Position numbers and translations under genes: made by a program. Below are positions 29,481 through 52,314 of a stretch of DNA of 64,000 nucleotides, in pieces. Within the stretch, counting starts at the first letter, position 1. Each line of letters opens with the position of its first letter. This DNA is from Ylistrum balloti (taxonomy: Eukaryota): the NCBI RefSeq assembly GCF_031769215.1, contig NW_026782059.1, positions 434,001 through 498,000 of the forward strand, written 5' to 3'. The notes below the pieces were generated by a model, which saw only the letters and a program-made list of their open reading frames with translations, ran no database searches and had not been told where the DNA came from.

Positions 29481-31952
29481 CCCATACACATGCATATGTA
29501 TTCAAACTATTGATGACTTCAAGTGCATCAAAGTGCAGCATCTTTATTGTCATAAATAACTCACGAGAAATAATAACGGAAATTAAAAACGTCTTATTGA
29601 AATTACTCGTTAATGTGAAGTACACTTAAAAAAAATAAACAGGTGATTTTCGTTTAAATGATGAATTGTACTGATTTCAATTAGCAACAAACAGCTTCAA
29701 TTATAATTTAAATTGAGCAATGTCAGTTCGTAATATCATGTACGAATGTAATGACTGTTAGGTCGCTTTCAAGTCTTATGTCAAAGGTGAGTCCTCGGTC
29801 ACCTGCCAGTGGCATACTTTCTCGTGACCGTGTATGTTTCTATAGAATAAATTGACAGCCTGCCTAACTCTATACATAAAATTGTAACAGCGTCAGTCAC
29901 ATTTGTACGACTAGATTATGAATATTAATCACCTTCAGAGATCTTATTTTGATAATGAACTCAGAGAATTTATCTCACAAAAACATTGCTTATACAGGTT
30001 TCTGAAAAATTACCGTTTCAATTATCTGTGAATATCATATATATTTATTTTTCGGATTTTTTTGATGGATGTAACGAAAATTAATTTCCAGTCTGACTTA
30101 TAAAAGGAATAAATCAATACTAGATTATATCACATGATCCGCCTGTTATCCAGTGTGTCGGTGTGTTATATACCATGGATAGCTTTTCCTTGTTTGCGCC
30201 ACACAGAAATCGAACGTGATGTCATAATATCAACAATGACTTTACACCATAAATTGAACATGGTACATCAAAATGGCTACCTGTGTTTGATTTTGTCCTT
30301 TTCATCTTTACTTTAAAACATGTCAACCTGTCGCGAAGCTTACAATCTCATGTAATGGAAAACTCTATTAGACCCTGTTTTCTTAACCTTCTACGTCGTT
30401 GATCCTATAATCTGATACCTTTAAACATCCACCAGTTATAGGATTCTATACACTTTGTAAAATCTTGGTCAACAAATATACAACCCTTGATACTTATTAA
30501 CCTTCGCGAACCAACGATAAATAAAGCCAAATTATTTCACTCACTTTTTGTGGTAATAATGTAAGTTTGTGTGCTTTTCAGAAAGCTGACATTTCAATAT
30601 TTTTAAGCAATTTGTATTTCTTTGCAAAGGCGTCTTTGTGTTCTTTGCTCAACAAATGAAATATTTTTTAAAACTTTAAAGTTTTCAGCCATTAATTGTG
30701 TATAAATCAACTGTATATCGTATAGTTTTTTTAGATAAATGATATATTTACATCTATACTATATATTATATAATTTATGTAATTAAGTCTTGCTTTTAAT
30801 AATGATAAAAAGACTGTCTATAAACTCTAATTCGGAGGACGACCGGAAGAGAAATATGTGACCTCTGCATATAAATATCCGACCAAATAAACAGGGTTGT
30901 TCTGTTTCACGAACCGTATACAAGAAGCTATGATATATTCATGACTTTGAAGGTGAAAAATAGGAGAAACATATGGGGAAAATAAATAAACGACAATTAG
31001 ATCACGTGTATTTGAATTTTAGCTCACAACTGTAAACAAATACCACACCTGTCTCCATGATACTCCAAAGCTGATGGTTATCCATTGGTAGATTTCAAAG
31101 AGAAATAAATTTTTATCTATAACTATAGATCTGTTGTGCTGTTTCTATACACGCCCACTTTGCCGCATTGTATATCTAGGATAACGACCTGGGGGTATTT
31201 TCGAAGAGAATTGATGAATCTTGGGACAGATATACAAACTACAGACCACAAGTATCACAGATACGTCAAACAGTATGTTACATTTAAAATTGGTTTCAGT
31301 ATCGATTTTCTAGTTACCTGAATACAAGTTTCCGGGCGAAGGAAGCAGTTAAGTAGGGACACTAGGCAGTGGTCAGACGTGATTATTTACCACTTAAAAG
31401 TGTCAGCGAATAAGTGAAGTAAACAAGATGGTGTTTTATCTGAAGACAGAAAAATCGATGAGGGAAGAAAATGAATTAAATAAAGATCGATTTCATAATT
31501 CATTTATGATATATTGAGTAGTACAGTAGTAAATATGGTCCGTTGTTTCTTAAGGTATTGGTTTAGCTCTCGTAAGACCAGTTCTCTCAGGTGATATTCA
31601 CTTGAGTGTCATTTGTACAAGCTTCGAAATAGCAGGTGTTAGACACTGTTAGTCAATTTTAGCGTTCCTTAGGCGCCTACTGCGTTTTAGATTTAGGCCC
31701 ATAGCATCACTGGTAGTGGTAGAAGGACGAAACATGTGAACGAGTAAATTCAATATATTAATGTTGCTATATTGCATTTAATTCAAAATTCCTATTGAAA
31801 TGTGCTGCCCATTTTTGTGTCTTTGTCCAATTCTAGCCGGAAAGTATCTCAACGTGACACCTAGCGGAAACTAAACAAACTATAATAAGAACTTAGTATT
31901 TCATGCTGTGTCGACTACATTTTATATTGTTATTTCTGAATCATTTACAGAC

Positions 31953-33972
31953 ATGGACGGTTCCGCGGATCCCGTGGGACCTCCAGAGGACCAAAACGTT
32001 CCACAGGAGAATTCCGATGATGTTCCGAATGACGTTCGGGAAACTTCGCAGGAATTGACAGAAATTGATGAAGAACCGGAACCAGAACCGCTAAACCTAG
32101 ACGACTACTTATTTGATGACGGACAGAACGTGACAATTGATCTGAATGAACAGATGTTGATGGTCGTTCCGGATGGAGTATTTTCTTTCGAAAAACTCAC
32201 ACATCTGATGCTCGGAGACAACGGTTTAACCAGTCTCCCGGACGAAATAGAGAGACTAGTAAATTTAGAGATTCTCGAAGTGCCAAACAATAACATAGAT
32301 GTCATTTCTAATAGCATATATCTACTATATCATCTTCGTGTGCTAGATTTCTCCAATAACGAAGTTACTGAAATACGACCGGATATTGCAAGTCTTCTTG
32401 ACATGCGCGAGCTGGTATTCAGCGGAAACAGACTGACGCGCATTCCAGCACAAATTGGATACCTGGAACAGCTCGAGTATCTAATTCTTAGTGAAAACAG
32501 GATTTCCGAACTTCCCAACACGATCGGCCACTGTCAAAATCTAAAGGTGCTTGCATTGGAGAGAAATATACTCGACTTTATCACGGCGGAAGTGTGTAAA
32601 ATTGAGGAACTGCGCAGACTCGCATTATCAGGAAACCACATAACAAACTTACCGAGAGAAACGGAAAACTTTGCATGTCTAGAACAACTTCTTTTAGACG
32701 ATAATGAGTTTGAGTTTGTTCCAATTCAGGTATATTGGATGGAAACCCTGACGGAACTTGCTCTGAGCGGCAACAAATTAAAGGCGATACAACCGGAAAT
32801 TGGCAACCTCAAGAATCTTACAATATTAGGACTTAACAATAACCAGATCGAGGCCATTCCTGACGAGCTATGTGATCTACATTTAATAGAGGTGTTGGGT
32901 CTGGAAAACAACCAGATACGGGAAATCCCTGATAATATCTCCAACTTGTACAATCTCAAGGAAATTTACGTCGGGAACAATTACATCAAGGAAATTCCGG
33001 AGAATCTTTGCTGGTGCTCGAATCTGGAAGTTCTAAGCTTGCTGAAGAACCAGATTTCCGACCTCCCAGTGGAGCTGGAGAATCTCCGTCACTTACATTC
33101 TTTAGTGCTAACAGACAATGTTTTCGAGGTTCTTCCTCCAGCTATCAGTTCCCTTCACGGTATGGAAATATTTCTCTCTGATGGTAACAAAGTCTCTGCA
33201 CTTCCAGAAGATTTTGGAAGTTTGAGTAAAATGAAACAAATTAATCTTAGCAGAAATGCGTTCACAGAGTTTCCCGTATCGATGTGTTCACTCAGAGGTC
33301 TAGAGGTTTTAGACATGAGACACAATCAGCTACAAGCTATACCAAAAGACGTTTCGAGATTTGATCGAATGCGTGTTCTGAACTTGAGCAATAATCAGAT
33401 CCGCACACTAGACCCTGATTTTTGTGGCATCAAGAACCTCCATGTTTTGGATCTCTCTGACAACTTACTTGACGATATTCCTGAAGAATTTGAAGGAATG
33501 AATGAACTCGCTGATTTGGACATTTCAAATAACCAGTTCTTACAATTTCCCAAAATAGTGTTTGCTATACCAAATCTTGAACGTCTGAAATATGACCAGA
33601 GGAACGGACATCCGACTCCTTCACTTCCGGATGAGGTTGAGTTTTCTGGACTTTCCTATCTGATAGTGTCCAATAACACACTGAGAACACTCCCGAACAC
33701 CATCAACGGCATGAAGAACATCCAGTCCTTCGTAGCGGACAACAATGACATTTGTGTTTTGCCTGAGGCTCTCTGTGAACTAAAAAATCTCAAAGTGCTA
33801 CATTTGAATAATAATTCGCTGACGTCACTTCCGGAAAATTTCGACAACCTTTCGGGATTAAAGGACCTGCGCCTCTACAACAACCCACTAAAGACGCCAC
33901 CGATGGATATTTGTGTTAGTGGCGTTATGCAGCCAATTGGTCGATTCATCAGACGAGCGATGGAGCGTGAAG
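31953..33972 (+). CDS. LRRD1: LRRD1 exon 1: acidic N-terminus plus ~25 LRRs
   Basis: acceptor tttacag at 31949-50, ATG at 31953; open frame 2020 nt; phase-1 donor G|GTTAGT at 33973. Confidence 0.93.
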
Positions 33973-35398
33973 GTTAGTTCTGAATTTATATTTACATTTG
34001 CACGACAATGTGACTGTAGACTATACATAACAGAAATAAATACAATTAAAAATTAATGAAGAGCATCCAACCGTGGCCATTATGACGTCATTGTTGTTGA
34101 CTTAGAAATGACATGAAAATGATTGTTCCACTTTGTGGGTGACGCTTTGGGTAATTAACAATTTGAATCTAAATGTAGTTACACTTTGTGCAACGAAGCG
34201 CAAATTTTATGTTTGCACGGAAATTTTATCCTTCCTTCAAATTGGTTGTTTTCGGCCAAAGATATTCGGGTATGGTAAATGGTAAATGGAGCGATATGAG
34301 GTTAGAATTGTTGGTTAGTCTTTATAATGTCTAGAGGTTCCATTTCGTAGTATCAAGTTGGACGTGTTTGATGCTCGTGAGTATACCTAGTGGTTCCGTT
34401 GAAGTCTAGCTACAATGCTGAATGAGATTGAGCAAGATTTACATTGCAGCCGTCCTTGATAAAGCGGAAGACGCTTACCATTCCGTAAAACTTTATTCTC
34501 CTTGTACGTTCTCTTTGTAAATCTTTCTGTTGTTCATATTTTGCTCTAGTTTCATCGAATTTGTGTTTGAATGAAGATTCTGTTAACATGTTGGTATTTT
34601 CTTTGTTGTCACAGTCATGACTTTTCTAAACGCACATGCCGACAAGTATGTTATGTTTGATCAAAAATCCTATCAAGTTTGGTTTGGTTTATTTTACATC
34701 CTATCAACAGCTAAGGTCATTTCAGCCTTCCAAATTTTCGAGGGGTTTGAATGTGATGATTTTGTGGACAATGTACAGTGAACTTGGTTGAGAAATCTTT
34801 AATATTGGCCAAAGTATTACGTAAATCTCTCGACTTGAACATGTTACATGATAATGTCGTCGATGAACTAGAAGACGCTTACTCTTCCGGAACACATGGT
34901 CTTAATGTACTTTTTCAGGAGTCGCCGTGTAAATCTTTATTTTGTTCATATTTTACCCTAGTTTTATGGAATATGAGATTGAATTATGTTTATGTTGCCA
35001 TGTTGGTATTTTGTTGTTTTTTATTTTTACAAGTGCAATTCATAGTATCTAGATATATATATATTGCTTTCATGTTACAATTTTCTGATTTCCTATCAGA
35101 ACTGTTGCTGTTGAAGATGTTTGAGGAGATAAAGACTTCCCTGGATAAGAATGAGATTCGATACATGATGAAGAAGTTCCGATTCCCGGATACGAAGATC
35201 ACAGAACTGGAACAGACATATCACGGGAAAGACAGGATACAAGAAAGAGTGTACAACGCCATGTTGTTTTGGAAGGACTTCAAAGGACCCTTGGCAACCA
35301 TTGACGAGTTGATCCGGGTATTTCATATCGTTGGTTACGAACAGTTGTGCTCGAAACTAAAATCAATGAAAATTTTCTCCCAGAGATTGAGGTTTTAA
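31953..35398 (+). CDS. LRRD1: Leucine-rich repeat and death domain-containing protein 1 orthologue (2 coding exons: 31953-33972, 35100-35398; ~772 aa)
   Basis: ~25 23-aa LRRs, one atypical repeat (LKYDQRNG), NPLKTPPMDIC cap, then a death-domain exon ending KIFSQRLRF. This matches the recalled human LRRD1 layout (SQIKG repeat, NPLLRPPVEIC, ERDEKIL, LFTRAIKF end). Confidence 0.85.
35100..35398 (+). CDS. LRRD1: LRRD1 exon 2: death domain
   Basis: acceptor ctatcag at 35098-99, phase 1; LLLKMFEEIK...RVYNAMLFWKDFKGPLATIDELIRVFHIVGYEQL (death-fold W and helical pattern); TAA at 35396. Confidence 0.88.
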
Positions 35399-41954: not shown

Positions 41955-43585
41955 TCAAATTTTCTTGGTTTGTTTATATTTATCACTCTTCGTTGTCCTT
42001 GGATTGGAGGTCAAATGTCTGACAAGCCGAGCCATGTCCATAAGCACGATGACAACCACGGATATACATAACATCAAGATACCAAGAATACCGATATTCC
42101 TCGACGATACCCGATCATCAGGTGCCGATATCAACTTCCTTCGACTAGAGCTCGTCATCTTTTTATTTACAGTCATTTCTGTCTTGAGAATTGTGATTTT
42201 CTTTATCAGTTCCTCAGTAGTATTGGGTATATTGGTACCACTTGTACAGGTACATGGACATTCAGGTCTTATAAACGGAGACTCAGGACTGGTGGAAGTG
42301 GTAGACGGAGACTCAGGACTGGTGGAAGTGGTAGACGGAGACTCAGGACTGGTGGAAGTGGTAGACGGAGACTCAGGACTGGTGGAAGTGGTAGACGGAG
42401 ATTCAGGACTGGTGGAAGTGGTAGACGGAGATTCAGAACTGGTGGAAGTGGTAGACGGAGACTCAGGACTGGTGGAAGTGGTAGACGGAGATTCAGGACT
42501 AGTGGAAGTGGTAGACGGTGACTCAGGACTGGTGGAAGTGGTAGACGGAGACTCAGGACTGGTGGAAGTGGTAGACGGAGACTCAGGACTGGTGGAAGTG
42601 GTGGAAGTGGTAGACGGAGATTCAGGACTAGTGGAAGTGGTAGACGGTGACTCAGGACTGGTGGAAGTGGTAGACGGAGACTCAGGACTGGTGGAAGTGG
42701 TAGACGGAGACTCAGGTCTGGTGGAAGTGGTGGACGGGGACTCAGGTCTGGTGGAAGTGGTGGACGGGGACTCAGGTCTGGTGGAAGTGGTAGACGGAGA
42801 TTCAGGACTGGTGGAAGTGGAAGACGGAGACTCGGGACTGGTGGAAGTGGTAGACGGAGACTCGGGACTGGTGGAAGTGGTAGACGGAGATTCAGGACTG
42901 GTGGAAGTGGAAGACGGAGACTCGGGACTGGTGGAAGTGGTAGACGGAGATTCAGGACTGGTGGAAGTGGTAGACGGTGACTCAGGACTGGTGGAAGTTA
43001 TAGACGGAGACTCAGGACTGGTAGAAATGGTAGACGGAGACTCAGGACTGGTGGAATTGGTGGACGGAGACTCAGGACTAATGGAAGTGGTAGACAGAGA
43101 CTCGGGACTGGTGGAAGTCGTAGACGGAGACTCGGGACTGGTGGAAGTGGTAAACGGAGACTCAAGACTGGTTGAAGTGGTGGACGGGGACTCAGGTCTG
43201 GTGGAAGTGGTGGACGGAGATTCAGGACTGGTGGAAGTGGTAGACGGAGACTGAGGACTGGTGGAAATGGTAGATGGAGACTCAGGATTGGTGGAGGTGG
43301 TAGTCGGAGACTCAGGACCGGCAGAAGTGGTAGACGGAGACTCAGGACTGGTGGAAGTGGTGGACGGAGACTCAGGACTGGTGGAAGTGGTAGGCGATGA
43401 TCCGGATGTTGTGGTCGATGTCGATGACGATGACCCAGTTGTGGTCGATGTCGATGACGGTGACCCAGTTGTGGTCGATGTCGATGACGGTGACCTAGTT
43501 GTGGTCGATGTCGATGACGGTGACCCAGTTGTGGTAGATGTCGAAGACCCAGAATCAGAACTGGTGGAGGTCGTAGACGCAAAAT
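41955..43585 (-). CDS. Terminal exon: S/T-rich stalk (~37x [10 protein letters not shown]), CPCTC + helical juxtamembrane module, TM helix, basic tail
   Basis: Stop-free minus frame continuous with ORF 41955-42176; [21 protein letters not shown] at ~42095-42039; the plus-strand shadow ORF is broken by TGA at 43252. Confidence 0.85.
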
Positions 43586-46500
43586 CTGGTGACGATGTAC
43601 ATTAGGGAAATAAATTAACTGTGCATCTGTCCTAAATCAGTTTGACAACATTTACATACAAAAAAGGAAAATGGAAAAGGAAAAATATTACAATGACAAA
43701 CCATAGGTCACTTCCACCCAACCCCTACTCGAAATTGTATATCGATGAGGAACCACTATATAGAATATATATATAGAGAAAATAAAATAAAAATGCGTAT
43801 CATCACTTACATGAAAAATTTGTTGGTGTTGTCATCGTCAAATTGTTACAATTTCTGGCTTCTACAAGGAAAAAACAAAAGTGATGAAACATAGAGACAA
43901 TAGACACAAAGTGAGGGGACAAAGAGAGAACAAATATAGAGAGACAATAGACACAAAGTGATGGGACATAGAGAGAACAGACATTGATAGACAATAGACA
44001 CAAAGTGATGGGACAAAGAGAGAACAAACATAGAGAGACAATAGACACAAAGTGATGGGACAAAGAGAGAACACACATTGAGAGACAATAGACACAAAGT
44101 GATGAGACATAGAGAGAGGACAAACATAGAGAGACAATAGCCACAAAGTGATGGGACATAGAGAGAGGACAAACATAGAGAGACAATAGCCACAAAGTGA
44201 TGGGACAAAGAGAGAACACACATTGAGAGACAATAGACATAAAGTGAAGGGACATGGAGAGAACAAACATAGAGAGACAATAGACACAAAGTGATGGGAC
44301 AAAGAGAGAACAAACATAGAGAGACAATAGCCACAAAGTGATGGGACAAAGAGAGAACACACATTGAGAGACAATAGACATAAAGTGAGGGGACATAGAG
44401 AGAACAAACATAGAGAGACAATAGACACAAAGTGATGGGACATAGAGAGAACAAACATAGAGAGAGACACAAACATGGGACAAAGAGAGAGAGACAATAG
44501 ACACAAAGTGATGGGACAAAGAGAGAACAAACATAGAGAGACAAGAGACACAAAGTGATGGGACAAAGAGAGAACACACATTGAGAGACAATAGACACAA
44601 AGTGATGAGACATAGAGAGAGGACAAACATAGAGAGACAATAGCCACAAAGTGATGGGACATAGAGAGAGGACAAACATAGAGAGACAATAGCCACAAAG
44701 TGATGGGACAAAGAGAGAACACACATTGAGAGACAATAGACATAAAGTGAAGGGACATGGAGAGAACAAACATAGAGAGACAATAGACACAAAGTGATGG
44801 GACAAAGAGAGAGAGAACAAACATGGGACAAAGAGAGACAATAGAGAGACACAAAGTGATGGGACAAAGAGAGAGAGAGACAAACATGAAGGGACAGAGA
44901 GACATAGAGAGAATAGACACAAAGTGATGGGACAAAGAGAAGAGAGAGACACACATGGGACAAAGAGAGAACACACATTGAGAGACAATAGACATAAAGT
45001 GAGGGGACATAGAGAGAACAAACATAGAGAGACAATAGACACAAAGTGATGGGACATAGAGAGAACAAACATAGAGAGACAATAGACACAAAGTGATGGG
45101 ACAAAGAGAGAACAAACATTGAGAGACAATATATATATCAAAAGACTTCTCTGTGGTGACCCAGTACTGCTTGAAATAAACAAAGTAAGAAATATAACGC
45201 TAATAAACAAATTATCCAAGATTACCCCTCATCATTTTTTGAAAATTTAATTGCCAAATCTAGGATGACCAACTATCCACCATTTTGTTTTTCTGATCTG
45301 TCCCAGACTCAAAGGGTCACAATTAAGGACCAAGAAAAATGTTCATCTGAAATCTGAGAAATATGTATCCAGTACTTTCAATATCATAATCGAAGATAGC
45401 CGCTTGACCATTGTGTTCATCTAACCAGTCGCAAAATCTCCATAGCACAAATAGGGATCACGGGGAATGCCCATATGAAATTTGAGAAAGATTCTTCCTA
45501 TCTACCTTCCAAGAAATATCGATGACAAACTTCCATTTAAAAAAAAAATGTCCGCTTATCCGCTGTTTTTTTTAAAAATCTGTCTCAGAATGGAACAATC
45601 TACAACTTAAGACGAAAGGGAGCGGCTTAAGAAATCCGTGAAGTATCCACCCTTCTCTTCTAGAGAAGTAGACTTTTATTGTCAAAGCGCAACATCACCG
45701 CCAGTCGGCCATTTTGTTTCTCAAATCAGTGCTAAAATAAGGTAATGCACCACTATGGACAAGTAGAAATGAAATTTGAAAATAACCTTTCCATTACTAC
45801 AAAAAATTAGTGTCAGTATCCAAGACGACCAGCTTTCAGCCATTTCGCTTTTCAAATCAGTCAAAAAATGGAACATTGCACAACCAGGGACCATTGAGAA
45901 ACTATACTTTAAATCTGAAAGTGATACCTCCAGTACTTCTCAAAACATAGCGATAACAAGGATTGTTTAATGACAGACAGTCCGACAACGGACGACAGAT
46001 AACGGAGAAACGGCGATTTGAATAGTTTAACATTTAATGATTCGGTTTGTTAAAAAGCATGTGAAGTGGGATGCCGCTGAGATAAACACTGGGATAACAA
46101 TGACTTTAGGCGATGTTACGTTTGATAATAAGACTGGAAATAAACCATCAAGCCCTCAAACATGTACAAACTTTGGTATGATATGATAACGATAATTAAA
46201 CATTCTAATATTCTTCTCAACAAGCCCAGTGACAAATATTACCTAACACACCAATCTCGCATTGTTCAAGGACGGACGGACGGCCTTCAAACATGATGTT
46301 GCCGATGCCATCTCCGGGGTAACTATACATTCAGTCTGATTCTAGCTTAGATGACTAGGTGATGACAGGATAATAACAATACCTTTCAATCAGTAAAAGT
46401 ATATAAAAAATGTCAAATGTCTGGGCATCTCTAACCAGCCAATCTTACCTAACAGTATATCAAACATGTCAAATGTCTGGGCATCTCCAACCAGCCAATC

Positions 46501-49500
46501 TTACCTAACAGTATATCAAACATATCAAATTGTTAACCAGCCAATGGTTAACAGTATATCAAACATATCTTTAAACTTTCTTATCATCACAATCTTACCT
46601 AACAATATATCAAACATGTCAAATGTCTGGGCATCTCTAATCAGCCAATCTTACCTAACAGTATATCAAACATGTCAAATGTCTGGGCATCTCTAATCAG
46701 CCAATCTTACCTAACAGTATATCGAACATGTACCTAAGAGTTTGATAAACAAATTTCAAAATTCCGTAAGCGTCTGTCTGTGAAAAAAACATATTTATCA
46801 TCATTTCTACAACCTAACAATGGAACTCAACTTTAACAGACTCAAACATTCAATCACAAACACTTCTCGTGGACCTAAATCTTATTTACACAGTATCATC
46901 AAACATGTACCTCAACAAATGTCACAGTCACTCACAAACCTAATCTTACCTCAACAGTATATAACATGTCACACAGTCACTCACCAAACCTACCTAACAG
47001 TTTATCAAACATATCAAATGATTAACAGTCACTCACCAAACCTACCCATTACCTCAACAATAACAGATCAAACAGTCAATCACCAAACCTACCCATCTCA
47101 ACAATAACAAATTCACACAGTCACTCACCAAACACCTCAACCTCAACAATAAATGATTAACAGTCACTCACCAAACTTTCTTATCATCACCTCAACAATA
47201 ACAGATTTACAGTCACTCACCAAACCTGCCATGTATCTCAACAATAACAAATTCACACAGTCAAAACGTTCGGAAGAGTTTGATAAACAACCAAACCTAC
47301 CCATGTACCTAAACAATAACAGATTCACAGTCACTCTACAACCTAACATGTACCTCAACAATAACATATTCACATTCAATCACAAACACTTCTCGTGGAC
47401 CTAAACAATAACAGATTTACACAGTCACTCACCACACCTACCCATGTACCTCAACAATAACAGATTCACAGTCACTCACCAAACCTACCCATGTACCTCA
47501 ACAATAACAGATTCACACAGTCACTCACCAAACCTACCCATGTACCTCAACAATAACAGATTAACAGTCACTCACCAAACCTACCCATGTACCTCAACAA
47601 TAACAGATTAACAGTCACTCACCAAACCTACCCATGTACCTCAACAATAACAAATTCACACAGTCACTCACCAAACCTACCCATGTACCTCAACAATAAC
47701 AGATTTACAGTCACTCACCAAACCTACCCATGTACCTCAACAATAACAAATTCACACAGTCACTCACCAAACCTACCCATGTACCTAAACAATAACAGAT
47801 TCACAGTCACTCACCAAACCTACCCATGTACCTCAACAATAACATATTCACAGTCACTCACCAAACCTACCCATGTACCTCCACAATAACAGATTCACAG
47901 TCACTCACAACACCAACCTGTGTATCTCAACAATAACAGATTCACAGTCACTCACCAAACCTACCCATGTACCTCAACAATAACAGATTCACGGTCACTC
48001 AACAAACCTACCCATGTACCTCAACAATAACAGATTCACGGTCACTCACCACACCTACCCATGAACCTGAACAATAACAGATTCACAGTCACTCACCAAA
48101 CCTGCCCGTGTACCTCAACAATAACATGTTCACAGTCACTCACTAAACCTACCCATGGACCTCAACAATAACATGTTCACAGACACTCACTAAACCTACC
48201 CATGGACCTCAACAATAACATGTTCACAGTCACTCACTAAACCTACCCATGTACCTCAACAATAACATGTTCACAGTCACTCACTAAACCTGCCCATGGA
48301 CCTCAACAATAACAGATTCAAGGTCATTCACCAAACCTACCCATTGACCTCAACAATAACAGATTCAAGGTCACTCACCAAACCTACCCATTGACCTCAA
48401 CAATAACAGATTCAGGGTCACTCACCAAACCTATCAACGGATATTAGACATGGCAACTGCGCACAAACACATGGTAACTCATCACTGATCTTTACAGTAT
48501 TAATCCCCTTACATATGAACAGATATATACCTGTATTTTTCGATACAAAACTATTGAATATAATACAAAATCGAGATTTACACTTCGAGGAAATAAAACA
48601 GTTTTTTATGCGAGTACATCAAGTCCATTAATTACATTGTGCGGTCGGGTTATATCTGTAAACGGTCACAAACCCGACACCACACCCTATTCAAGGAAAC
48701 GATATATTACCCACACGAGAACCTGTTAAAATATTCCCGGTGTTTAAATCATAAACATCCTACCTTACATAAAATCTATAATTTAACATTTTGGTTCTGA
48801 ATGGTATACAAGAACAAAAATCGCAACTTGTGCAGGCTCCGAATTTAACACACTGCACATGGTCTTAGTGTGACAAATGTATAAACGTTTCTTTATCCTA
48901 GGTAAATGCTTCGGACACGGGTTTGTCTCGGGCCCTGACTTTGTTACATGTATACGTCAAATTTATTATCCTATTTCTTATGCGAGCAAAGCTGCTCCAG
49001 TCACTCTGTAAATAAAGGGTTGTGGGCCTTGGAGTTACAATGCACATCGCTTTAAAGTAACTTATGTAGAAACCGAGTTCCACGATCCTTGCTTAAGGAC
49101 TGTATCGGTTATCTTTTATTGGTTCAAAGTTTCACAGAGCTGCATTCGTTTGTCGGTTTAAGTTCGTTTATGAAATTAGGACTTTCATGTTGTCCTTTCT
49201 GTTGAGCTTCGAGTAAGCTTAAGGCTTACATGAATATTTGTAGGTCCGCCCCGATTTGTGCTGGGTGTTACATTAAACGTATTGTATTAACAAACAGGCC
49301 CAAAGTTCTGCTAAAACATGTAACAATAAACTAGAGATTGTATTCCTTACGTAATTCATAAAGCGATGTATGGTTTTCGTTGGTAGTATAATTAGCAATG
49401 TCTCGTTTTCACAATTTCATTCCAATCTGAAAAATATCGAAAGAGTAAATATTTTGAGAGTATATATGAAGTGAACTATTCGTAGATATTATTGAAATAT

Positions 49501-52314
49501 GTACTTACATGATGGTTCATGTTGACGATTAGTTATGACTACGTTACTGATGTTTGCCATGTAGCCAAGATTTACTTTCCACCATCTGTCGCCGGTGTCG
49601 CGCGTATGTGAACACGAGCCTTTACTATACCACGGGTTCCGGTTACCGTCCACGGCCCTTGATGCCACGCCTTTGTAAATAACAGAGGATTGAGAAGCAT
49701 TCTTGTGTAAGGCGATGTTGTGTAATGTACAGGTATTATCTGGAATAAAGACACCACAGAGGGATGAATAAGGAAAGGAATGTAGGTGATGGTGGGGATG
49801 TGAGGGATGTAGGTGGGGATGTGTGTGGTGTGTGTGATGTGGGGAATGTAGGCGAGGATGTGTGTGGTGTGGGGATGTGTGTGGTGTGGGGGATGTAGGT
49901 GGGGATGTGTGTGATGTGAGGGATGTAGGTGGGGATGTGTGTGGTGTGAGGGATGTAGGTGGGGATGTGTGTGGTGTGGGGATGTGTGTGGTGTGGGGAT
50001 GTGTGTGGTGTGGGGATGTAGGTGGGGATGTGTGTGATGTGGGGAATGTAGGTGAGGATGTGTGTGGTGTGGGGATGTGTGTGGTGTGGGGGATGTAGGT
50101 GGGGGTTTGTGTGGTGTGGGGGATGTAGGTGGGATGTGTGTGATGTGGGGATGTGTGTGGTGTGGGGGATGTAGGTGGGGATGTTGGTGGGGACGTGTAT
50201 GGTGTGGGGAATGTAGGTGGGGATGTGTGTGGTGTGGGGGATGTAGGTGGGGACATGTGTGGTGTGGGGGATGTTGGTGGGGATGTGTGTGTTGTGGGGG
50301 GATCTAGGTGGGGATATGTGCGGTGTGGGGGATGTAGATGGGGATGTGTGTGGTGTGGGGGATGTTGGTGGGGATGTGTGTGGTGTGGGGGATGTAGGTG
50401 GAGATGTGTGGTGTGGGGATGTTGGTGGGGACGTGTGTGGTGTGGGGGATGTAGGTGGGGATGTGTGTGATGTGGGGGATGTAGGTGGGGATTTGTAAGG
50501 TGTGGGGGATGTTGGTGGGATGTGTGTGATGTGGGGATGTGTGTGGTGTGGGGGATGTAGGTGGGGATGTTGGTGGGGACGTGTATGGTGTGGGTGATGT
50601 AGGTGGGGATGTGTGTGATGTGGGGGATGTTGGTGGGGACGTAGATTGGGATGTTTGTGGTGTGGGAATGTAGGTGAGGATGTGTTTGGTGTGGGAACGT
50701 AGATGAGGGATGTTTGTGGTGTGGGAATGTAGGTGGGGATGCTTGTAGTGTGGGAATTTACGTGGGGATGTTTGTGGTGTGGGAATGTAGGTGGGGATGC
50801 TTGTAGTGTGGGAATTTACGTGGGGATGTGTGCGGTGTGGTGGATATAGGTGGGGATGTGTGTGATGTGGGAATTTACGTGGGGATGTGTGTGATGTGGG
50901 GGATGTAGGTAGGAATGTGCGTGATGTGGGAATTTACGTGGGGATGTGTGCGGTGTGGGGGATATAGGTGGGGATATATGGTTTATGGATGTAGGTGATG
51001 ATGTAGGTGAGAATGCGTATGGGCTGATGGTGTAGTGATGTAAGAGGAGATATGTGTGGTGTGGGGATGTAGGTGGGGATGTGTTTGGTGTGGGAACGTA
51101 GATGAGGGATGTTTGTGGTGTGGGTGATGTAGGTGTGGAAGAGAGTGGTGTGGGGATGTAGGTCGGGATGTTTGTGGTGTGGGTGATGTAGGTTGGGATG
51201 TTTTCGGTGTGGAGATGTAAATTGAGATGTAGGCGAGGTTGTGGGGGATTTGAGGATATGGCAGATGTAGATTGGGGCGTGGTGGGGACGAAGATGGGGA
51301 TATAGATGGGAATTTAGATGAGGATGTTGATGGAGATGTTGGTAAGGATGGGTATGTTGATGAGGATGGAAATGTAGAAATATAGGTAGGGATGTAGGGA
51401 TGTAGATGGGGATGTTTGTGGTGTGGGTGATGTAGGTGGGGATGTAGTTGTGGATGGGAATTACATGAGGATGGAGATGTTGATGTGGATGGGAATGTAG
51501 ATGTTGATGTAAATGTAGATAGGTATGTAGATGTTGATGTAGATGTAGATAGGTATGTAGCTGGTAATGTAGATGTAGATAATGAAGTAGATGGGGATGT
51601 AGATGTAGATAGGTATTAAGATGTTGATGTAAATGTAGATAAGTATGTAGATGGGGATGTAAATGTAGATAGGTATGTAGATGTAGATAGGTATGTAGAT
51701 GGGGATGTAAATGTAGATAGGTATGTAGATGGGGATGTAGATGTAGATAGGTATGTAGATGGGGATGTAAATGTAGATAGGTATGTAGATGGGGATGTAA
51801 GTGTAGATATGTATGTAGATGGGGATGTAGATGTAGATAGGTATGTAGATGGGGATGTAAATGTAGATAGCTATGTAGATGGGGATGTAGATGTAGATAG
51901 GTATGTAGATGGGGATGTAGATGTAGGTATGTATGTAGACAGGTATGTAGATGGGGATGTAGATGTAGATATGTATGTAGATAGGTATGTAGATGGGGAT
52001 GTAAATGTAGATAGGTATGTAGATGGGTATGTAAATGTAGATAGGTATGTAGATGAGAATATATAGGGGAATGTAGACTGGGATGTCCAATGTCTACATA
52101 GACAAGATCCTGACAAATAACCAGTGATATGTTTTCTATATATTCTACAAACCTGTAATAACTGGAAACAAAAATATACGTAACGGAAAACAGACTGCAA
52201 AAAATGCTCGCATTGTCTACTTCTTATTTTGTTTTACATACCTGTATTCCCTTCAACAACGTGTATCAAGGTCCAAAGAAATCGCCCGAAAACAAGCACT
52301 AACGAAAAAATCAT
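41955..52314 (-). CDS. Putative type-I membrane mucin / F-type lectin protein (possibly partly pseudogenised or mis-assembled)
   Basis: Phase-1 exon chain: signal peptide 52314-52242; S/T/P array exon from 52109; lectin exon 49739-49509; 43861-43811; terminal exon 43585-41955 with stalk, TM and stop. Confidence 0.7.
42277..43390 (-). repeat. 30-bp coding VNTR ([10 protein letters not shown]), ~37 copies
   Basis: plus-strand unit GGAGACTCAGGACTGGTGGAAGTGGTAGAC. Confidence 0.95.
43811..43861 (-). CDS. Short linker exon of mucin/lectin gene
   Basis: strong acceptor ttttttccttgtag and donor GTAAGT; phase 1/1; [16 protein letters not shown] with two N-x-T/S sequons. Confidence 0.65.
43885..45130. 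repeat. 47-bp GA-rich intronic satellite, ~26 copies
   Basis: unit GAGAGACAATAGACACAAAGTGATGGGACAAAGAGAGAACAAACATA. Confidence 0.95.
45250..46020. mobile_element. Related dispersed Helentron-like element
   Basis: CCATTTTGTTTTTCTGATC and GGCCATTTTGTTTC repeats, GACAGACAG..GGACGACAG microsatellite at ~45975. Confidence 0.45.
46410..46730. repeat. 56-bp tandem repeat, ~5 copies
   Basis: unit ATGTCAAATGTCTGGGCATCTCTAACCAGCCAATCTTACCTAACAGTATATCAAAC. Confidence 0.9.
46900..48432. repeat. 47-bp CA-rich intronic satellite, ~30 copies (degenerate at left end)
   Basis: unit CAGTCACTCACCAAACCTACCCATGTACCTCAACAATAACAGATTCA. Confidence 0.95.
49509..49739 (-). CDS. F-type lectin (fucolectin/F5-8 type C-like) domain, N-terminal half
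   Basis: [12 protein letters not shown]...ASRAVDGN...CSHT...WWKVNLG...ISNVVITNR matches the F-type lectin signature; acceptor ttattccag, donor GTAAGT at 49508. Confidence 0.9.
49780..51460. repeat. G/T-rich ~30-bp degenerate array (minus frame [10 protein letters not shown])
   Basis: unit GGTGTGGGGGATGTAGGTGGGGATGTGTGT with frequent 1-nt length variation in the G runs. Confidence 0.9.
51465..52109 (-). pseudogene. Mucin-like exon (GSCLCRHW + [10 protein letters not shown] repeats) with two in-frame stops
   Basis: acceptor tttgtcag at 52111-10; possible phase-1 donor TCA T|GTAATT at 51464 gives 645 nt (multiple of 3); synonymous-type variation in the S/T/P frame, but TAG at 51873-71 and TAA at 51618-16. 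Confidence 0.45.
51470..52060. repeat. GATGTA-based array with 30-bp higher-order unit (minus frame [10 protein letters not shown])
   Basis: unit GTATGTAGATGGGGATGTAGATGTAGATAG. Confidence 0.92.
52242..52314 (-). CDS. Signal-peptide exon of mucin/lectin gene
   Basis: [24 protein letters not shown], then phase-1 donor G|GTATGT at 52241. Confidence 0.7.

What the first reader, a model, noticed from the sequence alone, without database searches (positions are those of the whole stretch)
41955..52314. Membrane-tethered F-type lectin sandwiched between two different mucin domains
Seen: signal peptide; N-terminal S/T/P arrays; F-type lectin half-domain; short N-glycosylation linker; ~460-aa S/T stalk; Cys motif, helix and TM; short basic tail, with all identified exons in phase 1. 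Established: F-type lectins bind fucose and act in invertebrate immunity and gamete recognition (e.g. oyster bindins), usually as secreted proteins; phase-1 symmetric exons favour domain shuffling. Inference: a glycocalyx/mucus surface receptor that shields its lectin behind a distal mucin. This architecture is not one I recognise as named, and three independent VNTRs could make it highly length-polymorphic.
Basis: partly seen in the sequence, partly recalled or inferred. Interest (0 to 1): 0.7.

Follow-up and report, generated by a model that had tools for sequence, protein, structure and literature searches.

The report
Scallop membrane F-type lectin gene, broken
This is one copy of a scallop gene family for membrane-anchored fucose-type lectins in which satellite DNA has destroyed half of the lectin domain and the stalk next to the membrane has grown into a long mucin-like repeat; the supposed outer mucin is most likely an intron, so the gene is a damaged family member and not a new protein design.

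Summary
The locus is a real minus-strand gene (ATG 52314, stop 41955-41957). I confirmed a signal-peptide exon, an exon for the first half of an F-type lectin domain (FTLD), and a terminal exon holding a 436-aa S/T/P stalk, a CxCxC motif, a helix, a TM segment and a basic tail. All exon junctions are phase 1.

1. RefSeq homologues in two scallops and an in-genome paralogue (contig C476) share four exons: SP | FTLD-1 | FTLD-2 | linker-TM. The SP exon joins directly to the D-x-x-C start of the lectin. The window keeps that acceptor at 49739. The "N-terminal mucin" (49740-52241) therefore lies in intron 1. It has 29/59-bp periods, stops in all frames and only 2.8% G.

2. The FTLD-2 exon is shattered by satellites. 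44 nt remain and end in an in-frame TAG. No intact copy of this locus's exon was found elsewhere in the assembly.

3. The membrane module is a widely shuffled mollusc terminal exon. It has at least 147 copies in this genome and 2394 public clusters. It often sits behind long PTS stalks and several ectodomain types.

FTLD-1 still looks constrained, so the break is probably recent. No RNA data could be obtained.

Verdict: a damaged or lectin-dead member of an uncharacterised scallop family. Interest is low to moderate.

The parts
52242..52314 (-). Exon 1: ATG and signal peptide (24 codons + 1 nt), phase-1 donor cag|GTATGT
   Evidence: Sequence read. Aligns at 74% nt identity to the SP exon of the C476 paralogue. 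Same position and phase as exon 1 of XP_021365373 and XP_069108007.
49740..52241 (-). Intron 1 by homology, filled with C/A/T-rich minisatellites (arrays 51470-52055 and 49958-51219).
   Evidence: TRF periods of 29, 30, 59 and 88 bp with 6-9% indels. Only 70 G in 2542 nt. Stops in all three frames, and all three frames open at once over long stretches. 9822 different stop-free GT-AG chains can be drawn across the interval. Internal donors are weak. Similar arrays lie on dozens of other contigs.
49509..49739 (-). Exon 2: first half of the F-type lectin domain ([11 protein letters not shown]...ITNRQHEPS). Acceptor ttattccag|AT, donor cat|GTAAGT, both phase 1.
   Evidence: Pfam and PDB matches. 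87.5% nt identity to the paralogue. The exon boundaries are orthologous to the RefSeq models. 14 of 15 polarisable amino-acid differences are derived in the paralogue and 1 in the window.
47131..47290 (-). First scattered set of FTLD-2 exon fragments inside the decayed end of the 47-bp satellite (satellite 47290-48433; decayed part 47020-47264)
   Evidence: Exact matches of 18 nt and 14 nt to the paralogue's exon, plus a CLSNSSERF-like piece, in exon order and separated by satellite units.
46734..46777 (-). Remnant of exon 3 (FTLD second half). The acceptor is kept, followed by 13 codons ([13 protein letters not shown]) and an in-frame TAG at 46736-46734.
   Evidence: The paralogue's exon is 207 nt (L014 4854-5060). 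Only its first ~41 nt align here, at 91% identity.
46394..46731 (-). 56-bp satellite that replaces the rest of exon 3. A 23-nt exon fragment is embedded at 46573-46595.
   Evidence: The repeat unit contains the exon's last bases plus the splice donor (TGTTAG|GTAAGATTGG). The same satellite follows the intact exon in the paralogue.
43586..46393 (-). Last intron: 47-bp purine-rich satellite 43893-45131 and dispersed high-copy repeats at about 45100-45500 and 45900-46100
   Evidence: The DNA contigs of run X1 cross the exon/intron border without a break, and depth reaches 370-610 in the repeat bins.
42276..43585 (-). Terminal exon, part 1: PTS (mucin-like) stalk. Acceptor caccag|AT, phase 1.
   Evidence: There are 37 in-register 10-aa units, and the only indel is 9 nt. 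39 of 56 unit differences fall at third codon positions in the [10 protein letters not shown] frame. The paralogue has a short [10 protein letters not shown] linker at the same place.
41955..42275 (-). Terminal exon, part 2: ECPCTC motif, helix, [10 protein letters not shown] motif, TM (42039-42095), basic tail and stop (41955-41957)
   Evidence: 83% amino-acid identity to the paralogue, dN/dS 0.36. The module family has at least 147 copies in this genome and 2394 public clusters. There is no Pfam match.

Best explanation
The locus is one copy of a scallop gene family for type-I membrane-anchored F-type lectins. The family plan has four phase-1 coding exons: signal peptide | FTLD first half | FTLD second half | S/T linker plus CxCxC-helix-SAPDDR-TM module.

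Three things have happened in this copy.
(a) The third exon has been overrun by the two satellites that flank it. Only the first half of the lectin fold can now be encoded. If the 44-nt remnant is included, the protein stops after 115 residues. If it is skipped, the result is an in-frame 644-residue product.
(b) The short S/T linker of the terminal exon has expanded by in-frame 30-bp slippage into a stalk of about 440 residues that is 86% S/T/P.
(c) Intron 1 has filled with non-triplet minisatellites. On the G-poor strand these read as open P/T/S/H-rich frames.

The copy is therefore most likely a recently disabled lectin gene, meaning a young pseudogene or a null allele. It is not a working lectin sandwiched between two mucins.

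Shown: the exon structure, the break, the repeat anatomy and the family relations. Inferred: that the arrays are intronic, that the break is recent, and that the gene no longer works as a lectin.
For: - Exon structure: the C476 paralogue has the SP exon, FTLD-1, an intact 207-nt FTLD-2 and a short-linker terminal exon in the same order, with the same intronic satellites.
- RefSeq models XP_021365373.1 (M. yessoensis) and XP_069108007.1 (A. irradians) map to four exons, with SP joined directly to D-x-x-C.
- The window keeps that acceptor, which is identical to the paralogue's.
- The break: only nt ~1-41 and 139-161 of FTLD-2 remain, followed by an in-frame TAG. A genome-wide search found FTLD-2 only in C476 and C589.
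- The arrays: non-triplet periods, stops in all frames, 2.8% G, 9822 possible stop-free splice chains, weak internal donors, and look-alike arrays on many contigs.
- The stalk: in-frame units with a third-position bias. Other genes in this genome carry PTS stalks of 350-650 aa in front of the same module.
- Recency: dS between window and paralogue is 0.12-0.23, yet only 1 of 15 polarised FTLD-1 replacements lies on the window branch.
Against: - No transcript evidence of any kind. The one run found is DNA.
- The break rests on a single assembly in a satellite-rich stretch. X1 contigs cover 46700-46899 only thinly (mean depth 1.8, against 6-8 beside it), so the break is not independently confirmed.
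- FTLD-1, the SP exon, all splice sites and the 548-codon terminal frame are intact. The module shows purifying selection (dN/dS 0.36; 3 of 4 X1 variants are synonymous). This would also fit a gene that is still in use.
- Alternative phase-1 acceptors exist inside the arrays (for example 50303 and 50741), so an N-terminal PTS extension cannot be excluded.
Confidence: 0.5

Rival explanations
1. Lectin-dead membrane mucin still in use. The remnant of exon 3 is skipped, and a 644-residue type-I protein is made: SP, 77-residue FTLD fragment, ~440-residue O-glycosylated stalk, module, TM. It would serve as a glycocalyx or mucus-anchoring protein, so a lectin receptor would have been converted into a membrane mucin.
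For: - All exons are phase 1, so skipping keeps the frame: 73 + 231 + 1628 nt = 644 codons.
- The terminal frame and the module are intact and constrained.
- Stalk-plus-module genes are common in this genome.
- RefSeq predicts a partial-FTLD isoform in M. yessoensis, XP_021365374.1.
Against: - The remnant keeps a good acceptor (tttttttcacag|AC), so inclusion and a premature stop are likely.
- Half of a beta-sandwich is not expected to fold.
- The constraint seen on FTLD-1 fits a recently lost whole domain better than a long-standing fragment.
- There are no RNA data.
Confidence: 0.25
2. Assembly or haplotype artefact. The species normally has an intact FTLD-2 here, and the gene is an ordinary membrane F-type lectin on an unusually long PTS stalk. 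The reference carries a mis-assembled stretch or a rare null haplotype.
For: - FTLD-1 retains ancestral residues, which implies selection until very recently.
- The exon lies between two satellites, one of which contains the exon's own 3' end.
- X1 contigs are sparse exactly at 46700-46899 and absent at 47100-47299.
Against: - Two separate, ordered sets of exon fragments are interleaved with satellite units. That looks like real rearrangement, not a simple collapse.
- No alternative contig in the 648-Mb assembly carries an intact copy for this locus.
Confidence: 0.15
3. The N-terminal arrays are coding exons, giving SP-mucin-half FTLD-linker-mucin-TM.
For: - The FTLD frame is open for 339 codons upstream of 49739 and reads as P/T/S/H-rich repeats.
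- Phase-1 compatible AG sites exist at 52109, 51560, 51023, 50741 and 50303.
Against: - All three frames are open there because the strand has 2.8% G.
- The periods of 29 and 59 bp are not multiples of three.
- The FTLD frame has stops at 51873, 51618, 50985, 50877 and 50760.
- The internal donors that would be needed are weak (cct|GTCTAC, tac|GTTCCC).
- 9822 alternative stop-free chains exist, so a stop-free model carries no weight.
- No homologue has anything between the SP and the lectin.
Confidence: 0.08

Closest known systems
Scallop RefSeq proteins XP_021365373.1 ('pentraxin fusion protein-like isoform X1', Mizuhopecten yessoensis, 313 aa) and XP_069108007.1 (uncharacterised, Argopecten irradians, 324 aa)
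   Same: SP, FTLD, S/T- or Cys-rich linker, CxCxC-helix-SA(P/T)D(D/G)R-TM module. Four coding exons with phase-1 junctions at the same positions.
   Different: They have a complete FTLD and a linker of only about 30-60 residues. The window copy lacks the second FTLD exon and has a stalk of about 440 residues. Identity in FTLD-1 is only about 45%, so they are family members and not orthologues.
In-genome paralogue at contig C476 (1113.2-1120.4 kb)
   Same: Same four exons, the same 47-bp and 56-bp intronic satellites, and 83-87% nt identity in the exons.
   Different: It has an intact FTLD-2, a linker of about 45 residues and an intron 1 of about 430 bp. Its FTLD-1 evolves faster (14 of 15 polarised changes; pairwise dN/dS 1.5). 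Its flanks are not syntenic with the window, so it is not a haplotig.
Classical F-type lectins: eel agglutinin AAA (1K12), striped bass FBP32 (3CQO), fish fucolectins
   Same: Clear sequence homology of exon 2 to the first ~70 residues of the fold, including the SHT histidine and the NR arginine.
   Different: Those are secreted and have complete domains. Here the protein is membrane-anchored by family design, and the domain is truncated. This subfamily lacks the DCC disulfide motif.
Membrane-tethered mucins (vertebrate MUC1 type)
   Same: Type-I topology with a long, tandemly repeated PTS stalk encoded in one large exon and prone to VNTR variation.
   Different: No SEA, EGF or other mucin-defining domain was found. 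The anchor is a mollusc-specific module. The resemblance is functional only.

Membership tests
F-type lectin domain (FTLD) | Significant sequence similarity to solved FTLDs | tested here: met
   3CQO E 2.9e-24, 2J1R E 2e-12, 1K12 E 5e-9. Pfam PF22633 E 1.2e-9. The hits cover only the N-terminal half.
F-type lectin domain (FTLD) | Complete beta-sandwich of about 140 residues (both halves, ending in ...L.LCEVEV) | tested here: not met
   The Pfam match covers profile positions 1-44 of 91. The FTLD-2 exon is reduced to 44 nt plus scattered fragments. No intact copy for this locus exists in the genome.
F-type lectin domain (FTLD) | Fucose-binding His and two Arg | tested here: inconclusive
   The His in CSHT and the first Arg in ITNR are present in exon 2. 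The second Arg (RRL) lies only in the remnant exon, which ends in a stop. Positions were assigned by alignment to homologues and were not checked on a structure.
Scallop membrane-anchored FTLD family (XP_021365373 / XP_069108007 type) | Four phase-1 exons: SP | FTLD-1 | FTLD-2 | linker-module | tested here: met
   Exons 1, 2 and 4 are intact at orthologous boundaries. Exon 3 is present only as a remnant with its acceptor.
Scallop membrane-anchored FTLD family (XP_021365373 / XP_069108007 type) | C-terminal CxCxC-helix-SAxDxR-TM(Asp) module | tested here: met
   Alignment A2 has invariant S, P, D, D, R, I, G and the terminal D. Profile hits include FTLD-bearing proteins P0003, P0006 and P0122.
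Mucin-like (PTS tandem-repeat) domain | Long tandem repeats dominated by Ser/Thr/Pro in a supported coding frame | tested here: met
   Met for the terminal exon: 436 aa, 86% S/T/P, 37 in-frame 10-aa units. Not met for the N-terminal arrays.
Mucin-like (PTS tandem-repeat) domain | Dense O-glycosylation | not testable with these tools
   Needs protein chemistry.
Pseudogene / null allele | Loss of essential coding sequence or a premature stop | tested here: met
   About 140 nt of exon 3 are missing, and the remnant carries an in-frame TAG at 46736-46734.
Pseudogene / null allele | No functional transcript; relaxed constraint | tested here: inconclusive
   No RNA run is available. FTLD-1 and the module do not show relaxed constraint. 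This suggests either a very recent loss or continued use.

The most novel reading that the evidence does not exclude
A lectin receptor caught turning into a membrane mucin. Satellites born from the exon's own 3' end and splice donor overwrote the second lectin exon. Because every exon is phase 1, the remnant is skipped, and the gene lives on as a 644-residue lectin-dead membrane mucin whose stalk expanded about ten-fold by in-frame 30-bp slippage.
Probability: 0.2. Interest if true: 0.5.

Novelty: new member of a known kind. Interest (0 to 1): 0.3.

Why it matters
The main value is as a correction. In G-poor minisatellites every reading frame is open and thousands of stop-free splice chains exist, so a "mucin domain" can be read out of an intron.

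Three things are of modest interest in their own right:
- an uncharacterised scallop family of membrane-anchored F-type lectins;
- a very widely shuffled and still unnamed mollusc stalk-TM terminal exon, with at least 147 copies here and 2394 public clusters;
- a clear example of an exon being overwritten by satellites derived from its own exon/intron junction.

If the exon-skipped product is expressed, the locus would show how a membrane mucin can arise from a lectin receptor.

Tried and rejected
- **RNA evidence.** Laying it showed contigs running straight across exon/intron borders, so it is DNA. It neither confirms nor refutes splicing, and it covers the broken exon only thinly.
- **Word search with the C-terminal module.** Restricted to proteins of 301-959 aa, it found nothing. 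The profile search was needed instead.
- **Word search with FTLD-1.** It gave only generic FTLD proteins at up to 54% identity: fish fucolectins, Saccoglossus proteins and streptococcal lectin-cytolysins. There was no close orthologue.
- **Search for an intact FTLD-2.** None was found in the window (tblastn with three homologues) or for this locus elsewhere in the genome.
Nothing between 49508 and 43586 is conserved in the paralogue except the FTLD-2 remnant and the satellites. The 1-kb stretch 48450-49490 is single-copy and absent from the paralogue.
- **C476 as a haplotig of the window.** Rejected, because its flanks share no similarity with the window.
- **Literature.** A search for membrane F-type lectins in scallops found only general lectin reviews.
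- **Spliced model.** Exons were searched one by one by reference. Exon joins were made only inside local scripts, to check reading frames.
Full report
**What is there**

The window is low-GC eukaryotic DNA. The nearest public proteins belong to the scallops Argopecten, Mizuhopecten and Pecten, and other notes of this scan also call the genome a scallop.

The finding lies on the minus strand. Translation in three frames and direct reading of the sequence give four conserved coding pieces:
- **Exon 1 (52314-52242):** signal peptide [24 protein letters not shown] plus 1 nt, with donor cag|GTATGT.
- **Exon 2 (49739-49509):** acceptor ttattccag|AT and donor cat|GTAAGT. It encodes [19 protein letters not shown]...CSHT...WWKVNLG...ITNRQHEPS.
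- **Remnant of exon 3 (46777-46734):** 44 nt behind a good acceptor.
- **Terminal exon (43585-41958):** acceptor caccag|AT.

**The lectin exon**

Pfam places it in the discoidin/F-type family: PF22633, E 1.2e-9, covering profile positions 1-44 of 91 only. The best solved relatives are true F-type lectins: FBP32 3CQO (E 2.9e-24), pneumococcal fucolectin-related protein 2J1R, Sm-hPAF, and eel agglutinin 1K12. Each match is to the first ~70 residues of the domain. A word search returns fish fucolectins and other FTLD proteins at up to 54% identity. The "half-domain" observation is therefore correct.

**Family context**

The genome holds 44 or more FTLD-1-like exons and 147 or more copies of the C-terminal module. 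On several contigs the two lie a few kb apart (C476, C589, C704, C546, C937, C760, C80).

The closest copy is on C476, with 77% amino-acid identity in FTLD-1 and 83% in the module. Its flanks are unrelated to the window, so it is a true paralogue. It has:
- an SP exon ending in phase 1;
- FTLD-1;
- an intact 207-nt FTLD-2 exon ([25 protein letters not shown]...LTLCEVEVL);
- a terminal exon with a short [10 protein letters not shown]-type linker before ECPCTC.

It also shares the window's 47-bp satellite in intron 2 and the 56-bp satellite after exon 3.

Two RefSeq proteins map onto their genomes as the same four exons, with the SP joined directly to the D-x-x-C start of the lectin. They are XP_021365373.1 (M. 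yessoensis) and XP_069108007.1 (A. irradians).

**The "N-terminal mucin"**

Under this conserved plan, everything between 52241 and 49740 is intron 1. The window keeps the orthologous acceptor, which is identical to the paralogue's. Splicing there gives ...[15 protein letters not shown]. This parallels ...GEVQG-D-EDCRIQNIAL in M. yessoensis and ...AGAN-D-GHCELTNIAL in A. irradians.

The arrays themselves behave like non-coding minisatellites:
- Periods are 29, 30, 59 and 88 bp, with 6-9% indels.
- The coding-sense strand has 70 G in 2542 nt. TAG and TGA are therefore almost impossible, and all three frames are open together for hundreds of codons.
- Even so, each frame has stops. The lectin frame has them at 51873, 51618, 50985, 50877 and 50760.
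- A brute-force enumeration found 9822 different stop-free GT-AG exon chains from the SP exon to the lectin exon. The existence of such a chain therefore proves nothing.
- The internal donors that would be needed are poor, for example cct|GTCTAC and tac|GTTCCC.
- Look-alike arrays at 65-74% identity lie on dozens of other contigs.

I rate the arrays as intronic at about 0.8. An alternative acceptor inside them (50303 and 50741 are phase-compatible) cannot be excluded without RNA.

**The broken lectin**

Of the paralogue's 207-nt FTLD-2 exon, the window has only these pieces:
- nt ~1-41 at 46777-46737, running into TAG at 46736-46734;
- a 23-nt piece (exon nt ~139-161) at 46595-46573, inside the 56-bp satellite;
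- a second ordered set of fragments at 47290-47131, inside the decayed end of the 47-bp satellite.

The 56-bp repeat unit contains the exon's last bases plus the splice donor. The satellite was therefore born from the exon/intron junction, and in this copy it has overwritten the exon. A genome-wide search finds FTLD-2 only in C476 and C589.

Two outcomes are possible. If the remnant is included, the protein is 115 residues long. If it is skipped, the frame is kept: 73 + 231 + 1628 nt = 644 codons.

**The stalk and anchor**

The terminal exon holds 37 in-register [10 protein letters not shown] units plus about 5 diverged ones, and the only indel is 9 nt. The composition over 436 residues is 39% S, 30% T and 17% P.

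Differences between the units fall 39 of 56 at third codon positions. By distinct variant types, 12 are synonymous and 15 non-synonymous, against 8.7 and 21.3 sites respectively. This gives modest support for this frame being the coding frame.

The module has no Pfam family and only "hypothetical protein, Mollusca" clusters in the ESM Atlas. A profile of six copies finds 2394 public clusters at E up to 1e-3. Among 57 longer hits, the ectodomains are C-type lectin (15), IgGFc-binding (4), FTLD (4), PLAT, WSC, EGF, Kringle, TSP1 and Ig.

Other genes of this genome carry tandem PTS stalks of 350-650 residues in the same exon as the module. One public FTLD member (P0122) has a T-rich stalk of about 120 residues. 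A lectin or other head on a PTS stalk with this anchor is therefore a common mollusc design. This copy is simply at the long end of the range.

**Alive or dead?**

Pairwise dN/dS against the paralogue is 1.5 for FTLD-1 and 0.36 for the module. I polarised the FTLD-1 differences with nine outgroups. Of the 15 that could be polarised, 14 fall on the paralogue's branch and 1 on the window's. With dS of 0.12-0.23, neutral drift should have given the window branch about ten replacements.

The window's lectin exon was therefore constrained for most of the time since the duplication. The break is recent, or polymorphic, or an assembly problem.

Run X1 is DNA from the same species, with about 1.2% differences. 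Three of its four variants in the module are synonymous. It covers 46700-46899 only thinly, so the break is not independently checked.

**Verdict**

The interpretation of a lectin sandwiched between two mucins is not supported. The best reading is a recently disabled, or at least lectin-dead, member of an uncharacterised scallop family of membrane-anchored F-type lectins, with an expanded proximal PTS stalk.

Exons were handled one at a time by reference.

Noticed in passing
window 41958-42277; G000 genome-wide: The CxCxC-helix-RKLxSAPDDR-TM(Asp) module is a very widely shuffled terminal exon. It has at least 147 copies in this genome and 2394 public clusters, almost all from molluscs. It sits behind C-type lectin, IgGFc-binding, FTLD, PLAT, WSC, EGF, Kringle, TSP1 and Ig heads. 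It has no Pfam family. The invariant juxtamembrane motif suggests a processing or interaction site.
   Followed up: partly
window 46394-46731 and L014 5055-5790: The 56-bp satellite after FTLD-2 carries the exon's last bases plus the splice donor in every unit (11 donor copies in the paralogue). The satellite therefore arose from an exon/intron junction, and it predates the duplication.
   Followed up: partly
L014 (G000:C476:1113000-1122999): The structurally intact paralogue carries 14 of the 15 polarisable FTLD-1 replacements, with a pairwise dN/dS of 1.5. Its lectin head is evolving fast, through either positive or relaxed selection.
   Followed up: partly
window 31908-33977 and 34778-35398 (+): A 689-aa open frame made of leucine-rich repeats (LRR_8, E 5e-66) is followed by a 206-aa frame with a Death domain (E 5e-5). 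This is probably one LRR-death-domain immune-type gene.
   Followed up: no
window about 45100-45500 and 45900-46100: Depth of the X1 contigs rises to 370-610, against 6-10 beside these stretches, with many joints and loose ends. This points to a high-copy dispersed repeat inside the last intron.
   Followed up: no
window 48450-49490: A 1-kb single-copy stretch in intron 2 has no counterpart in the paralogue and none elsewhere in the genome.
   Followed up: partly
P0006 / XP_021365374.1 (M. yessoensis): RefSeq predicts an isoform X2 that lacks the first ~46 residues of the FTLD. Partial-lectin isoforms may therefore exist in this family.
   Followed up: no
L028, L029, L031, L033 (G000 C361, C506, C138, C218): Four other terminal exons combine tandem PTS repeats of 350-650 residues (different units in each) with the same membrane module. 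This looks like a family of membrane mucin-like genes.
   Followed up: partly
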